From Salisapilia sapeloensis CBS 127946 (lineage: Eukaryota; Protista; Oomycota): a DNA stretch of 64,000 bases. Below, piece after piece: positions 12,095-17,895 of this stretch. Both the position numbers and the translations under genes were made by a program. Where the stretch lies: contig JAADVB010000008.1 in assembly GCA_023334545.1 (NCBI GenBank), positions 1-64,000 on the forward strand, read 5' to 3'. The stretch's first letter is position 1. Each line of letters starts with the position of its first letter. The notes below the pieces were generated by a model. That model saw only the letters and a list, made by a program, of their open reading frames with translations, ran no database searches and was not told where the DNA came from.

Positions 12095-12264
12095 TGTGTC
12101 TTTCTTGGACGCTAGTCGTACCTTTTTGGCCACCATCTCGAGCTATCGGACGCAACAATGTGACGACAGGGATTCCGTAGCGAATTTTGTAGATCGCCGC
12201 TAAATGCGGATGTTAATACGAGATCATTGTCCACCAACCGTAATTGCATGGAATAAGCCCATTC

Positions 12265-13233
12265 ATGGTGGCTACTCGACGTTCACGCAGACTGCAAGGG
12301 CAGGAAGAAGAAACGAAGTCTTTACCAGCAATTGCTAGCAAGAAAAGTACAAAAGCAATAACTGAGAAAATGGGCGGAAGAAATTCCAAGCCAGATATGT
12401 CAACGAAGGATGCAGCCGAAGTAGATGCTGTGTCTTCGACGTTGGAGAGTAGAAGTGACGAGAACACTTCTTCGGAAGAAGTGATTGCGTTGGATAGTTA
12501 TTTAGATGCCGAAGGTAGTAAAGAGAAGGAGGAGGATGTGCTGGTGCTCGATAGTGCGAGTGACAATGAAAGTGAAAAGGCAGTCGAGAGTGCACCGAGT
12601 GAAGAGAATATCGATGCGTACGTCGACTTTGCTACGTCCAATCTAAACTTTGATGCACCAGCGTCCACTTCCAAAGCGAAGAAGCCAACTCGCAAATTGG
12701 TACCGGACACACTTGACAGTGGAGCAGCATCGAAGACGTCGTACTTTGATTTTGAAAGTAAAAAGGATGTGGCGAATGGTACGCAACTATCGGCGTCTCA
12801 GCGTGATCAGGAAGACGATAAGAATCTAAAGGCTGAGTTGAACGTCCGAGCGCATGCAAAGGTCCAGCAAGCACAAAGCAAGTCTACAAGTGACGCTGGT
12901 CACAAATGGTTCGGCATGGCATCGCATGAACTGACGGCCGAAGCCAAGCGTGACTTTGCGCTCTTACGCATGCGAAACTACTTGGATCCGAAGAAATTTT
13001 ACAAGACTTCGGACCATGGAAAGAAGGGCATGCCGAAGCATTTCCAACAAGGTGTGGTCATCGAAGGCACGACGGAAGCCAAGAACATGAGGCTGACGAA
13101 GCGCCAGAGACAAAAGACGTTCACGGAGGAAGTGATGGCCGATGAAGGTATCCAAGGCTACACGAAGCGTGTGTTTACGCAGATCCAGAGAAGTAGAGCA
13201 GGTCGTCCTGGTAAGAAGCGAAAGACGAGATAG
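12265..13233 (+). CDS. FCF2: Fcf2/DNTTIP2-like pre-rRNA processing protein
   Basis: C-terminal Fcf2 domain KWFGM...KRDFALLRMRNYLDPKKFYK...FQQGVVIEG...RLTKRQRQKTFTEEVMAD. Start placed at MVATRRS. Confidence 0.88.
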   Translation: MVATRRSRRLQGQEEETKSLPAIASKKSTKAITEKMGGRNSKPDMSTKDAAEVDAVSSTLESRSDENTSSEEVIALDSYLDAEGSKEKEEDVLVLDSASDNESEKAVESAPSEENIDAYVDFATSNLNFDAPASTSKAKKPTRKLVPDTLDSGAASKTSYFDFESKKDVANGTQLSASQRDQEDDKNLKAELNVRAHAKVQQAQSKSTSDAGHKWFGMASHELTAEAKRDFALLRMRNYLDPKKFYKTSDHGKKGMPKHFQQGVVIEGTTEAKNMRLTKRQRQKTFTEEVMADEGIQGYTKRVFTQIQRSRAGRPGKKRKTR

Positions 13234-13266
13234 ATCTTTTTAAAGCGGAATAAATACATGGTTGTC

Positions 13267-16200
13267 TTATTCGCATTCCGACATCGATCGACGTCTCGTC
13301 ATGCTCCGAGCCTTGTCAAACTCCGCGGCATTTGCGACACTTACTGCTCGGCGAAGTCGACCTCGCTCAGCTCGCCGAGCAGCAGCATCCGATGCATCCA
13401 CTTCTCGTTTGGCCTTTTCAAACGTCTATAGCAACAGGTTAGATTCATCGGGTTGTATAAAGAGAAGGCGATGGTACCGTGCAAAAGGAAGCAAGAGTAG
13501 CAAAGAATTCTGTCGGGTCTCGCGTCGGGTCTTCGCCAAAGTAATCAAAGACACCAAACACTTCGGTTTCGGCAGACTGGATAGATGCTTCGAGGATTCG
13601 AATCTCTTTACCAATAGACTCGATCTTTGTGTTGAGTCTCGATATCGCAGCTTCTTCTCCGTCCTATTGATACAAACATGAGGTCATATCCTTTATAGAA
13701 ATAAAAGCGCGATACCTTTTGCAGGTGAGACAGCTCGTTTTGTAGCTTTTCGAATCCAGTATACAGCATCTTGATCGTGTCTTTGATATTCTTAAAGTTC
13801 TCTCGTGCTGCGAGCGGAACGCTTGGTAAGTCAAGTGCAAAGTCGAGAACGGGCGGATGGTTCTTGTGCGCTAGGCGCACAAGATAGTGCAATACAGTCG
13901 TGCGTTTATTCACAGCCTTTGTCTGACCAAGTCGGAGTAGGGAGTCGACTTTAAAACCTCGAATACTGTCCTCTTCTCCATCTCCACCTCCATTTAGTCG
14001 ATTCCCGAGTTTCAAGACCATGCTCAATAGCTTTTTCAACCGCTTGCTACTCTTAACTTGTTCACAAGCGTCGACTACATGACTTGCTGACGTTCCGATA
14101 TCGTTCTTTTGCGATGGAAAGGACAATGTGAATAGCAGACATTCCGTTCGAGATGCATATCGAGGTACTTGAGCGATTTCTACAATAAACTTTTCAGCTT
14201 CACCGAGAATCGTCACGTCGCCAGTGTACTCATTCACTTTCTTCACTTCCTCCGACGTCGGAAGGTATCCGTTGATCGCACTAATCTGCTCGAGTGTCAG
14301 TCGAGAAGCGTCAAAAGACCGGATCGAGTCTGCAATCTCATGATGGGCCATCTTGATCGTAGCGAGTGTAATCGCGAGGTTCATGGCTTTTTTCCCATCA
14401 ATCAACGTCACGCTCTTAGGTCTCGCTACTTTTTCGGAGTTCTGACGCTTGCTCGAGGAAGGTGGTTGGGCATTAGCAAAGAACAGCGATTCGAGTTCAT
14501 CGACGTCTAACTCGAACTCCGTATCGGCTTCGTTATCATCTTCCCAAATCGTCTGAGACCGGAGGTTACTCAGTCGTTCTTGAGAAATTGGTTGCCAGTG
14601 CAGTTTCTTTCGACGATTCGGCTTGACTTCGACTTTCGCCTTGACAGACGTAGCGTCAGATGCAAGTGCATCAGGACCGAGATCCAACACGCTGTCGTTC
14701 AAACCGTCCAGTGTCATCTTATGCTTCACTGCTCCTTCTGGTAGTCCCATCTTAAGCATCTTAAAGTACTTTCCAAACACCAGATCGTCTTTTAATCTCC
14801 CATTTCCGGCATCCGAAGTCGGTTTCTTTTCAGATGTGGCTTCAGCAGGCTCTTGCCTCTCCTCTATGACTTGACTTGGCGTAGAGGATCGATCACTAGT
14901 ATCTTGCTTCTTAGGGGCGACTGGCTTCGTCGCTACCTTGTTCCGTTTCGCGAGGAGCTGAGAAAGCATCGCTGATCGTGCGTCCGTCGGCTCTTCTTTC
15001 GCTCCTTCTTCCTTATTGTCGAATCTTTGTGGCTGGTCCTGACTAGATGTTGCAGTACTTTCCCCTACTGGTGGCGTCTCTGGACCAGGTGAAGGTTTTC
15101 GAGCGGCTAGTAACTGACTCAACATGCCAGCTTTCGGCTCTGCTGTTGAAGGTTCCGATTCGGGTGTATGAGCGGACACTTGATCCTCTTCATTTTTTGA
15201 AGTGTCTACTACGGGCGAGGATTTCCGTGCTGCTAGTAACTGGTTCAGCATATTTGCTCTTGCATCTGGTGCAGGAGCTTTTACTTCGACATTAGGAGTG
15301 GACGCTTGCTTCTCTTCGATGTCTGCAGTCTCTTGAACGGAAGAAGCTTCGCTTACTTGGGCATCATGTGAAGGTTCCCGAGCTGCTAGGAGCTGACTTA
15401 GCATAGCAGCTCTTGGATCTGCTACATGCACTTTGAATTTGAGACTAGAGGACACATCTTCTTGCTCACTCGATACAGCTTGCACATCTGGTGCCTCTGT
15501 ATCCGATTCGGGTATGATACTTGCGTCCTCTTGACCAACTTCGTCAGGAATTGGAGTGTCTTTGACTTGATCTTTCATCGTGTCTTCATTCCATGTATCG
15601 TCTGTATAATCCGAGCTCCTGCTGTCGTGTGAAGCCACAACAGAAGCGCTTACAGAGTCCGATGACAGTGGTGGTGGTGGAAGATTGGACATGGCAGCAA
15701 TATTAAGTAAATCATCAATAGACAAGTCACTATTTCGTAAGAAGGTTCCGAGTTCACGTAGCTTGCCAGAGTGCGTATTGGTCGGTGGTGAAAGATCCAT
15801 AGGCACATCAACGATGCCGCACATATCACATTGCCAGTTGCCAAAGTACTTTTGAATGTACGCATCGTGATTTGTCCGATCATTCATCGTCATGAATCCA
15901 AAAGGTATTTTGGGCAACCCGACACAACCGGTATGGAAGTTCTTGTGGCAATCACCTTTACATGTAATCAACTGTGAACGTGTCAAGTAGTCGTCTTCTT
16001 CACATACACTACAGATATCAATCGATGTAGGCTGTGAATGGCGCTTAGCAGACTGTAGCGCTACTACCTCTGCAGTAGTTTGCTTTGGCATTAATTCCTT
16101 TAACGGATTCGTTGTGAAGGATTTCCAGCCTCTGCCACTATCTACCTCTTCCAATGATGCCTCTGCTGGTGTTTGCTTTGGAAAACATACTTGTACGCCA

Positions 16201-17664
16201 GGAGATTCCAGTAATTCAAGAGCTGCATCAAGTCGATTGTTCGTCTTCTGTAGAGCGAATGTAACTGTACTTGGATGGTACCCCATTTTGGTAATACTGG
16301 CGTATAGCAATGGATCTGGGAGGACGGTATGGTGCTTTGCAATCTCAATGATACCTTGTCGAACGGCTGCATTACCTGTTAAATTCACTTGAACGTCGCT
16401 ATCTGCGCTGGCCTTGTCATCATTGTGTAGTACAAGGTCGACAGAGAAGGTTTCTTCGTCAAAAGCATGCTCATATTGCTTCATCATGTCTAGGTCTTTC
16501 TTTTCAAGTGTGAAGAGACCAGCACGATGGAACCAAGTCGAGTCGACGTATCGAAAGAGGACTTTAGAAGCCGTGTCAATGTCATCTGCATCTTCATATT
16601 CGTCTCCAAAGGAGCAGAGGATGGAAAACCCACCGCAGATGTGAACACCAGTTTCCCACATTATCGCCAGGAAACCTTCCTCTGTATCCCATTCAATGAC
16701 AGGTCGATGTTCTCGACTGTCATGAGTGAATGGATGGTCTTCCGAGGAAAAAATCATGCGGTGGTCATCCCACATCTGTATACACGGTTGCAATTCTACC
16801 GGTAGTCCTCTCATAATGAGAGCTTTGAACACCATCGGCTGGTCATTTCGTATTCCAGGGTTTTCGATTAAAGCATGGAAGTGATGGAGAAATCGTTGGA
16901 GCGACGGTGGGGTCTTGGAGCTCAGACCGTCGGTTGTAAGTGCATCCATCTCCCATCGCTGTCGATAGAAACTAGCGAAAGCTTGCATCGGATCATCTTC
17001 CAAGTGTATAAACAATAGGTAGCAAGCGACAAGGACTCCGCTTCGTGTCTTTCCGGTGGTACATTGGATAATGGCGACATTGTCCGGGTCAAAAGATAGC
17101 CAGGAAAAGAGAGCATAGCAGATTTGGAACATGAGTTCGAGAGGAGGTGTGTGTGACTTGATACCGTCTCGGTCCCAACTAAAATCTAAGAGCTGTTCAT
17201 GCAGTTTAGAAGCTATTTTCACAGAAGATGGTCTCGTATCAAACTTGACGGTCGTCCAGAACTGATCCATACCCTAAAGTTGATCCACAGGCAAGTTAGT
17301 ACGTGTATCGAATGGACAAGATTGATTCATTTATATGTACCTTTGGTTCATTGGTGGGCACGTTGTCATGCTCCAAATCTGCTTCAATTGCGTTTAGATT
17401 AAATAGGAGGTAATGTCCTTTGTGGTAATGCTCAAGGTACGATGCTAGGTCGTTCACATTGACTTTATTGGCTTTCTTGTCCGTCGGACCAAAGACAGAG
17501 CTGCCAACCAGGAGCAATCGATCTGCTACCTCGGTCGCTTCAATCACCGATTCCGGTGTCGAAGCGAACTTTTGAGGTAATAGATTCGTCGAACTCATTT
17601 GTAGTCCGAGATGCAGCGAGCTACTATCTAACATAGAGCTCGTAAAGCGTCGTAGTGAATCCAT
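13267..17664 (-). CDS. Multidomain formin: PTEN-like phosphatase + C2, UBA-like, PHD finger, 4 WH2-like helices, CCDC53-like motif, FH2; 4 exons
   Basis: FH2 hallmarks RKKLHWQPI, LIDGKKAMNLAITL, VLKLGNRLNGG and GFKVDSLLRLGQTK. N-terminal QCTTGKTRSG loop. The C4HC3 finger is at ~15820-16015. Exons joined by GT-AG introns near 17275-17340, 13670-13725 and 13430-13485. Confidence 0.9.
14945..15420 (-). repeat. Four spaced copies of a (D/E)xR/KxxMLxQLLA(A/K)R peptide in the formin
   Basis: DPRAAMLSQLLAAR, DARANMLNQLLAAR, EPKAGMLSQLLAAR and DARSAMLSQLLAKR. Confidence 0.9.
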
Positions 17665-17895
17665 AATGGCGTGTTCTCTCGTCGAACGTGGTCGGAATGG
17701 CTATCAAACTGCTAGTCATGCCTCTCCCGTAAAACTAAATTATTGTACATACAAAATATAAGATAAAGAAGTTTACAAAGAAGTATAAAAGGTGTGTACA
17801 TCGGATTAATCTTGAAAGGGTGGAAAGTTGGGTTGGGACTGAAATAGATGCATGAACGGCATCTTCCCAGCCAATTTGGTACAAGCAAGTGTGTC

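What the first reader, a model, noticed from the sequence alone, without database searches (positions are those of the whole stretch)
14580..15420. Formin without an FH1 tract but with four WH2-like helices: a Spire-plus-formin design in one chain?
No polyproline FH1 precedes the FH2 domain; the only candidate is LPPPP far upstream. Instead there are four DARSAMLSQLLAKR-type repeats resembling the amphipathic helix of WH2 actin-binding motifs but lacking the LKKV tail, followed by a KYFKMLKMGLP...KM motif like the WASH subunit CCDC53. Animal Spire uses four WH2 motifs together with a separate formin. This protein may feed G-actin to FH2 without profilin.
Basis: partly seen in the sequence, partly recalled or inferred. 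Interest (0 to 1): 0.7.

Follow-up and report, generated by a model that had tools for sequence, protein, structure and literature searches.

The report
Formin with helix repeats replacing FH1
A transcribed oomycete-type formin has, where other formins carry a proline-rich FH1 arm, four short helix motifs and one small folded module; this layout is shared by diatom and oomycete formins and its function is untested.

Summary
The minus-strand gene 13267-17664 has 4 exons and encodes 1408 aa. Transcript contigs confirm the splicing. It is a PTEN-PHD-FH2 formin.

Between the PHD finger and FH2 lie:
- four copies of a D-[AP]-R-x-x-M-L-x-Q-L-L-A-x-R motif ("S", window 14919-15428);
- one 45-aa CCDC53-C-terminal-type module ("M", 14634-14804; Pfam E=3e-11).

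The only proline run is one PPPP, about 350 aa upstream of FH2.

This is not a one-off design. All 77 stramenopile homologs found (oomycetes, diatoms, a pelagophyte) carry 1-8 M modules directly before FH2. None has a proline run longer than 3. The S motif recurs in 28 of the 80 proteins, always in the order S array, M array, FH2. A diatom formin has 16 copies.

S matches only the helix half of WH2:
- profile comparison aligns it in register, empirical p about 0.01;
- an LKKV tail is absent in 69/69 copies;
- there is no Pfam WH2 hit.

Context supports an actin link. M sits next to canonical WH2 motifs in giant-virus proteins, and next to half-WH2 arrays in a non-formin protein.

Actin binding by S or M remains inferred, not shown. 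First-reader notes from this scan describe similar FH1-less formins elsewhere in this genome. No paper describing this layout was found.

The parts
13267..17664 (-). Whole formin gene: 4 exons, CDS 4227 nt, 1408 aa. Exons are 17341-17664, 13716-17273, 13478-13663 and 13267-13425 (stop TAA). Introns are 17274-17340 (67 nt), 13664-13715 (52 nt) and 13426-13477 (52 nt), all GT..AG.
   Evidence: Ortholog tblastn, sequence reading, translation check. Transcript contigs skip exactly these three introns.
15354..15428 (-). S motif copy 1 (ADPRAAMLSQLLAAREPS), ORF aa 615-639
15201..15275 (-). S motif copy 2 (PDARANMLNQLLAARKSS), ORF aa 666-690
15075..15149 (-). S motif copy 3 (AEPKAGMLSQLLAARKPS), ORF aa 708-732
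14919..14993 (-). S motif copy 4 (TDARSAMLSQLLAKRNKV), ORF aa 760-784
14634..14804 (-). Single CCDC53-C-terminal-type module (M), ORF aa 823-879. It is a small folded bundle of 3-4 short helices.
   Evidence: Pfam PF10152 E=3e-11, profile 110-147/147. AF2 pLDDT 83.7 alone and above 90 in context.
13719..14624 (-). FH2 domain, the part in exon 2 (ORF aa 883-1184). It continues in exons 3 and 4 (13478-13663, 13267-13425).
   Evidence: Pfam PF02181 E=1.6e-71; ortholog alignment across the introns
15669..15680 (-). The only proline run (PPPP, ORF aa 531-534). It lies about 350 aa upstream of FH2 and is not conserved in orthologs.
15819..16016 (-). PHD-type zinc finger (ORF aa 419-484), weak Pfam matches
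   Evidence: PHD-1st_NSD E=1e-5, PHD E=1.7e-3
17043..17063 (-). CX5R loop (CTTGKTR) of the PTEN-like phosphatase domain
   Evidence: the ortholog alignment covers this region

Best explanation
Shown. The locus is the pre-FH2 arm of an expressed, spliced 1408-aa stramenopile PTEN-type formin. A polyproline FH1 is missing here and in the whole family. In its place is a roughly 290-aa stretch that AlphaFold models with low confidence, suggesting disorder. It carries four copies of a 14-residue helix-type motif (S; family consensus D-P-R-A-A-L-L-x-x-L-x-x-R-K). One folded CCDC53-C-terminal-type module (M) follows and ends about 10 residues before the FH2 lasso. The order S array, M array, FH2 is conserved from diatoms to oomycetes with variable copy numbers. 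This protein sits at the S-rich, M-poor end of that range (4 S, 1 M).

Inferred. S is the helix half of a WH2-type actin-binding motif. S and M act as docking sites on a flexible arm. They raise the local concentration of actin monomers, or of an actin-loaded partner, at the barbed end held by FH2. Functionally this would substitute for FH1, possibly without profilin.
For: Gene and expression.

No FH1: the longest proline run in the 400 aa before FH2 is 3 or less in 70 of 71 family members. The 71st is this protein, with 4. A metazoan control formin has a run of 11.

M arrays before FH2 occur in every stramenopile homolog.

S is conserved:
- one copy across Phytophthora;
- 3-5 copies in Pythium;
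- 4 copies here;
- 7 and 18 copies in two ochrophyte-type formins;
- always upstream of M.

The S copies here differ at synonymous sites.

The S region has low AF2 confidence (pLDDT 29-50), while M and FH2 score about 90. This fits short motifs that fold on binding.

S aligns in register with WH2 helices. Against viral WH2, P=0.0086 and 2/200 shuffles reach the score. Against the P0073/P0076 repeats, which hit Pfam WH2 positions 1-14 of 28 at E=1.2e-3, P=0.0096 and 0/200 shuffles reach it.

M occurs with WH2 in independent proteins. A giant-virus ORF on L005 has M plus a Pfam WH2 at E=7e-6, above the cut-off. L003 has M plus polyproline plus two LKKV motifs. An Atlas cluster combines CCDC53 and WH2.

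A diatom homolog also has two S copies after FH2, the place where animal formins carry WH2-like/DAD tail motifs (the comparison is from my own knowledge).
Against: - No S copy hits Pfam WH2.
- No LKKV-type tail in 69/69 copies.
- An S profile retrieves no WH2 or actin-complex chain from the PDB.
- The profile similarities are short (10-13 columns) and only nominally significant.
- The hydrophobic moment is modest.
- S is undetectable in Saprolegniales and Albugo homologs, so it is dispensable for the family.
- Spacings of 42-52 aa are longer than I recall for tandem-WH2 nucleators.
- Nothing here tests binding to actin or profilin.
Confidence: 0.42

Rival explanations
1. The S helices are ligands of the CCDC53-type modules, in cis or between molecules. 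The S and M arrays would then form an autoinhibitory or multivalent clustering system rather than recruiting actin.
For: S-type arrays and M arrays co-occur in formins and in the unrelated P0073/P0076 proteins. M is a small helical bundle, a common receptor type for amphipathic helices. Copy numbers of both vary together as arrays.
Against: AF2 of aa 600-1184 leaves all four S motifs at pLDDT 29-50 while M is above 90, so no docking is predicted. Many family members have M arrays and no detectable S. In giant-virus proteins M sits beside canonical WH2 motifs, whose known partner is actin.
Confidence: 0.2
2. The S helices dock a non-actin partner, such as a regulator, a membrane surface or the formin's own N-terminal PTEN/C2/PHD part (DAD-like autoinhibition). 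They would be unrelated to monomer delivery.
For: A helix followed by a basic end is also the pattern of DAD, LD and similar motifs (own knowledge). WH2 membership tests fail. Similarity to the VASP F-actin-binding motif is not significant: 3.4 bits, with 167/5000 shuffles as good (motif from PMC10340426).
Against: No DID/armadillo domain is present. The motif is conserved in formins with different N-termini and in a 759-aa fragment-like homolog. The contextual link of M to WH2 and actin machinery favours actin.
Confidence: 0.22
3. One reading: the four S helices line up four actin monomers into a nucleus, as Spire does, and hand it to FH2.
For: There are four tandem helix motifs upstream of FH2, and they show weak in-register similarity to WH2 helices.
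Against: The copy number is not fixed at four; it ranges from 0 to 18 across the family. The LKKV tail is absent. Spacers are 42-52 aa here, 21-33 aa elsewhere, and unconserved. There is no KIND, Spir-box or FYVE domain.
Confidence: 0.1
4. The repeats are chance or low-complexity filler with no function.
For: They lie in a region of low AF2 confidence whose spacers are not conserved.
Against: The motif is conserved from diatoms to oomycetes at a fixed position relative to M and FH2. The copies here have diverged at synonymous sites while keeping the peptide.
Confidence: 0.03

Closest known systems
Heterokont (stramenopile) PTEN-formins, described as PTP-C2-FH1-FH2 (Grunt et al. 2008, PMC2386819; Pruyne 2017, PMC5628938)
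   Same: An N-terminal PTEN-like phosphatase with a CX5R loop and a C-terminal FH2. The closest homologs are Phytophthora, Aphanomyces, Saprolegnia, Pythium and Albugo formins, at 46-57% identity over FH2.
   Different: The published label includes an FH1. No polyproline tract exists here or in 70 of 71 relatives. Its place is taken by S motifs and CCDC53-type modules, which those papers do not mention.
WH2 motif (Pfam PF02205), as in WASP/WAVE, Spire, Cobl and VopL
   Same: An arginine followed by an L-L-x-x-[LI] helix. S aligns in register with Pfam-validated WH2 helices. It occurs as tandem arrays in disordered regions of actin-assembly proteins.
   Different: No LKKV tail in 69/69 copies. 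No Pfam hit. No PDB WH2 is retrieved. Spacers are longer. Actin binding is untested.
C-terminal region of WASH-complex subunit CCDC53/WASHC3 (Pfam PF10152)
   Same: The M module matches profile positions 110-147 of 147 at E=3e-11. The AF2 fold matches CCDC53 clusters in the ESM Atlas at TM 0.80.
   Different: Only the last 40 or so residues are shared. The CCDC53 N-terminal part is absent, so this is not a WASH subunit. Homologs carry the module in arrays of up to 8. I found no described function for the module.
WH2-like/DAD tail motifs of animal formins (mDia1, INF2, FMNL3) and the GAB/FAB motifs of Ena/VASP
   Same: A short amphipathic helix followed by basic residues, inside an actin-elongation machine. 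A diatom homolog has two S copies after FH2, where these tails sit. Motif sequences for VASP come from PMC10340426; the rest is my own knowledge.
   Different: Here the helices lie before FH2. No DID partner domain is present. Similarity to VASP FAB is not significant.
Formins reported to lack FH1 (Dictyostelium ForC, some apicomplexan formins; own knowledge, not checked here)
   Same: An FH2 without a polyproline arm.
   Different: As far as I know, those are not described as having conserved replacement modules. Here two conserved elements occupy the FH1 position.

Membership tests
Formin (FH2 protein) | FH2 domain | tested here: met
   Pfam PF02181 E=1.6e-71. It continues across two confirmed introns.
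Formin (FH2 protein) | Polyproline FH1 directly N-terminal of FH2 | tested here: not met
   The only proline run is PPPP, about 350 aa upstream. The family-wide maximum run is 3 or less in 70/71 members; the control formin has 11.
PTEN-type formin | N-terminal PTEN-like phosphatase/C2 region | tested here: inconclusive
   A CX5R loop is present. Pfam gives only a weak PTP-SAK hit at E=0.006. The region aligns with orthologs; among the homologs, P0024 is named tensin phosphatase by its source and P0059 carries PTEN_C2. The C2 part of this protein was not separately tested.
WH2 motif | N-terminal amphipathic helix with L-L-x-x-[IL] | tested here: met
   M/L-L-x-x-L in all four copies. In-register hhalign to viral WH2 and half-WH2 repeats, better than column shuffles.
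WH2 motif | LKKV-type motif a few residues after the helix | tested here: not met
   0 of 69 S copies in the family have L-[KRH]-[KRH]-[VTAS] downstream.
WH2 motif | Match to the Pfam WH2 profile | tested here: not met
   No hit up to the listing limit of E=10 for the four copies or for 27 family copies, although HMMER's filters drop most matches above E about 0.1. An S profile finds no WH2 chain in the PDB.
WH2 motif | Binds the barbed-face cleft of G-actin | not testable with these tools
CCDC53/WASHC3 (WASH complex subunit) | Conserved C-terminal module | tested here: met
   PF10152 positions 110-147/147, E=3e-11; Atlas fold match TM 0.80.
CCDC53/WASHC3 (WASH complex subunit) | N-terminal part of the family profile (the coiled coil that joins WASH and FAM21, from my own knowledge) | tested here: not met
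   The isolated 57-aa module matches only profile positions 110-147. The whole-ORF hit begins at position 62 and runs through low-complexity linker.
Spire-type tandem-WH2 nucleator | KIND domain, four canonical WH2 motifs, Spir-box/FYVE | tested here: not met
   None is found by Pfam. The helices lack LKKV.

The most novel reading that the evidence does not exclude
The S helices and the CCDC53-type modules together form a monomer-delivery arm that does not use polyproline and may not need profilin. This arm replaced FH1 in the stramenopile formins sampled here. The same module would be a general, so far uncharacterised part of actin-assembly machines, found in the WASH complex, giant-virus WH2 proteins and foraminiferan formins.
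Probability: 0.25. Interest if true: 0.85.

Novelty: new variant of a known kind. Interest (0 to 1): 0.62.

Why it matters
Formin elongation is normally explained by FH1 polyproline tracts that capture profilin-actin. Here a large, old formin family has no such tract. It spans major crop pathogens (Phytophthora, downy mildews), fish and animal pathogens (Saprolegnia, Aphanomyces, Pythium insidiosum) and diatoms. It keeps two other conserved elements in the FH1 position.

If those elements recruit actin, three things follow:
- It would be a second solution to monomer delivery by formins.
- It would give the orphan C-terminal module of the WASH subunit CCDC53 a function.
- It would correct the published 'PTP-C2-FH1-FH2' label for heterokont formins.

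If they do not, these formins are natural FH1-less controls for formin mechanism. Both outcomes are directly testable with standard actin assays.

Tried and rejected
1. S as a worn-down first helix of the M module (both can start with D-P-R): hhalign found nothing (3 columns, P=0.11).
2. S as a relative of the VASP F-actin-binding motif (sequence from PMC10340426): 3.4 bits, and 167/5000 shuffles score as well.
3. Sequence search of the PDB with M, with the S region and with the S profile: chance hits only.
4. Fold of M against the PDB: Foldseek E above 3 and VIA-align Z of 3.6 or less, showing only generic three-helix arrangements. My UBA-like guess got no support.
5. Word search of 5.8 billion proteins with the S region alone (aa 610-790): no hit at E up to 10. 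The spacers are therefore unique and only the short motif is shared.
6. ESM Atlas feature searches: the S region gave no usable hit; the M module, with FH2 families excluded, returned only CCDC53-type clusters.
7. Literature searches for CCDC53 with formin, and for DUF2360/PF10152: nothing relevant.
8. The large all-against-all protein search was not run. The operators flagged it as costly, and no claim here rests on an absence of relatives.

Full report
**1. The gene**

The finding lies in a minus-strand ORF, 13608-17270 (1220 aa). Alignment of oomycete orthologs to the window and reading of the junctions give a four-exon gene:
- exon 1: 17341-17664;
- intron: 17274-17340 (67 nt, with a TACTAAC box);
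- exon 2: 13716-17273;
- intron: 13664-15 (52 nt);
- exon 3: 13478-13663;
- intron: 13426-13477 (52 nt);
- exon 4: 13267-13425.

The second intron spans 13664-13715. The CDS is 4227 nt, encodes 1408 aa, has no internal stop, and all introns are GT..AG. Contigs of four public runs from one study lie on 13200-17700 with no differences. They skip exactly these three introns. The gene is therefore transcribed and spliced as modelled, and the repeat region is part of the mature message.

Pfam finds FH2 (E=1.6e-71), a CCDC53 match (E=5e-9), weak PHD-type fingers and a weak phosphatase match. The CX5R loop CTTGKTR is at 17043-17063.

**2. The observation**

Four copies of a short motif sit at ORF aa 617-636, 668-687, 710-729 and 762-781, which is window 14919-15428. 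The KYFKMLKMGLP element is at 14634-14804. The only proline run is PPPP at aa 531, window 15669-15680. The 57-aa element alone matches Pfam CCDC53 at E=3e-11, over profile positions 110-147 of 147 only.

The four copies are not a recent DNA duplication. Tandem Repeats Finder sees nothing there. Over the 15 core codons of the 6 copy pairs there are 32 synonymous differences, 28 identical codons and 30 non-synonymous differences.

**3. The layout is family-wide**

A word search with aa 560-1184 returned 79 proteins. Of these, 77 are stramenopile proteins that carry PF10152. Of those 77, 75 also carry PF02181; the other two, P0073 and P0076, have no FH2. They include Phytophthora, Peronospora, Plasmopara, Bremia, Pythium, Globisporangium, Lagenidium, Albugo, Aphanomyces, Saprolegnia, the diatom Thalassiosira exigua and the pelagophyte Chrysophaeum. 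The best identities are only 46-57%, over the module plus FH2. The window's organism is therefore not close to any named genome in that collection.

In the 400 aa before FH2, the longest proline run is 3 or less in 70 of 71 members. The single run of 4 is this protein's own. A metazoan control formin from the same hit list has a run of 11. Published surveys label heterokont PTEN-formins 'PTEN-FH1-FH2' or 'PTP-C2-FH1-FH2' (PMC2386819; PMC5628938). That label does not fit these sequences.

**4. What replaces FH1**

Every stramenopile homolog has 1-8 copies of the CCDC53-type module (M) directly upstream of FH2. They usually form a head-to-tail array with a period of 55-60 aa.

An HMM built from the four short repeats and iterated on the homologs recovers the same motif (S) widely:
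- one copy in most Phytophthora species (D-x-K-S-A-L-L-S-E-L-K-T-A-R-K);
- 3-5 copies in three Pythium proteins;
- four copies in an unnamed homolog;
- seven in another unnamed homolog;
- sixteen, at a 32-33 aa period, in the Thalassiosira formin.

The family consensus is D-P-R-A-A-L-L-x-x-L-x-x-R-K, often followed by P or S. S is detected in 28 of 80 proteins and in two or more copies in 9. It always lies N-terminal of the M array, which always precedes FH2. The diatom protein has two extra S copies after FH2. The window's protein is the only formin in the set with a single M, and it has four S.

**5. Structure**

With an alignment of 74 module instances, AlphaFold2 folds M confidently (pLDDT 83.7) into 3-4 short helices. 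No solved structure resembles it beyond generic helical arrangements: Foldseek E above 3, VIA-align Z of 3.6 or less.

The ESM Atlas returns three kinds of cluster:
- CCDC53 clusters (TM 0.80);
- a foraminiferan FH2+CCDC53 cluster;
- a giant-virus cluster in which 12% of members also carry WH2.

In a model of aa 600-1184 the S region has pLDDT 29-50, and only copy 1 is drawn as a helix. M scores above 90 and FH2 about 90. So S lies in a stretch modelled as disordered, as expected for short motifs that fold on binding. No docking of S onto M or FH2 is predicted.

**6. Is S a WH2?**

Against:
- No Pfam WH2 hit for the four copies or for 27 family copies, listing hits up to E=10.
- The S profile retrieves no WH2 chain from the PDB.
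- None of 69 S copies has an LKKV-type tail.
- Similarity to the VASP F-actin-binding motif is not significant.

For:
- Two metagenomic non-formin proteins, P0073 and P0076 (about 2000 aa), have 6-7 M modules. They end in 5-6 repeats of G-R-G-G-L-L-D-A-I-A-G-A-R-G. These repeats hit Pfam WH2 positions 1-14 of 28, below threshold at E=1.2e-3.
- hhalign puts S in register with these repeats over 13 columns (P=0.0096). None of 200 column shuffles reaches that score.
- A scan of viral contigs with the M profile found nine giant-virus loci. Their ORFs join M to canonical WH2 motifs. L005 has Pfam WH2 at E=7e-6, above the cut-off. L006 and L009 are sub-threshold. L003 has M, two polyproline tracts and two LKKV motifs.
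- S aligns in register with the helix of these viral WH2 motifs (P=0.0086), and 2 of 200 shuffles are as good.

So S corresponds to the helix half of a WH2-type motif, with a short basic end instead of LKKV. In three independent protein families, M keeps company with WH2-type motifs.

**7. Mechanism**

Shown: the architecture, its conservation, its expression and the absence of FH1.

Inferred, at about 0.4: S and M are docking sites on a flexible arm. They bring actin monomers, or an actin-loaded partner, to the FH2-bound barbed end and so do the job of FH1.

Rivals:
- S binds M, giving autoinhibition or multivalent clustering (0.2).
- S binds a non-actin partner (0.22).
- The strict Spire-like nucleus-building reading (0.1). 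It is weakened by the variable copy number (0-18), the long unconserved spacers and the missing LKKV.
- Filler (0.03).

None of these can be settled without binding data or multichain prediction.

**8. Novelty**

The Pfam pair PF10152+PF02181 is visible in precomputed annotations. I found no paper that discusses it or the S motif. First-reader notes of this scan report other formins in the same genome with CCDC53-like or other helical repeats in place of FH1 and several tandem WH2-like arrays. Those loci were not examined here.

I rate this a new variant of a known kind. It is of real interest to formin and WASH researchers, but its central functional claim is untested.

Noticed in passing
P0073 (2023 aa) and P0076 (1914 aa), metagenomic proteins: Non-formin proteins with 6-7 CCDC53-type modules, a conserved central region of about 600 aa with no Pfam match, and 5-6 C-terminal G-R-G-G-L-L-D-A-I-A-G-A-R-G repeats embedded in Gly/Arg-rich sequence. 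The repeats match only the helix half of Pfam WH2.
   Followed up: partly
L003:2230-3474, L006:2185-3453, L007:2152-3072, L009:2152-3453 (giant-virus contigs): Giant-virus ORFs share an N-terminal domain of about 250 aa, followed by one CCDC53-type module and two WH2-type motifs. L003 also has two polyproline tracts. The layout resembles a viral WASP-like actin regulator. L001 and L004 match most of the CCDC53 profile (positions 43-147 and 15-146).
   Followed up: partly
P0065 (Thalassiosira exigua formin), aa 1-520 and 1460-1530: Sixteen S motifs at a strict 32-33 aa period, each followed by an A-P-P-T-P-like stretch, plus two more S copies C-terminal of FH2.
   Followed up: partly
window 13233-13269: The formin's stop codon (13267-13269) lies only about 33 nt from the end of the convergent plus-strand ORF 12244-13233. 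The transcript contigs run on for about 935 nt beyond position 13200, across that neighbour, so the 3' ends of the two genes probably overlap.
   Followed up: no
window 17274-17340, 13664-13715, 13426-13477: The introns are very short (67, 52 and 52 nt). The first holds a yeast-like TACTAAC box.
   Followed up: partly
Oomycete orthologs, e.g. P0009 aa 730-830 and P0001 aa 669-760: Orthologs carry two divergent upstream module variants (K-Y-x-L-M-L-K-x-G-V-P and Y-F-R-M-L-R-M-G-C-P types) between the S motif and the canonical M array. The window's protein lacks both. Relative to Phytophthora it has gained S copies and lost M copies.
   Followed up: partly
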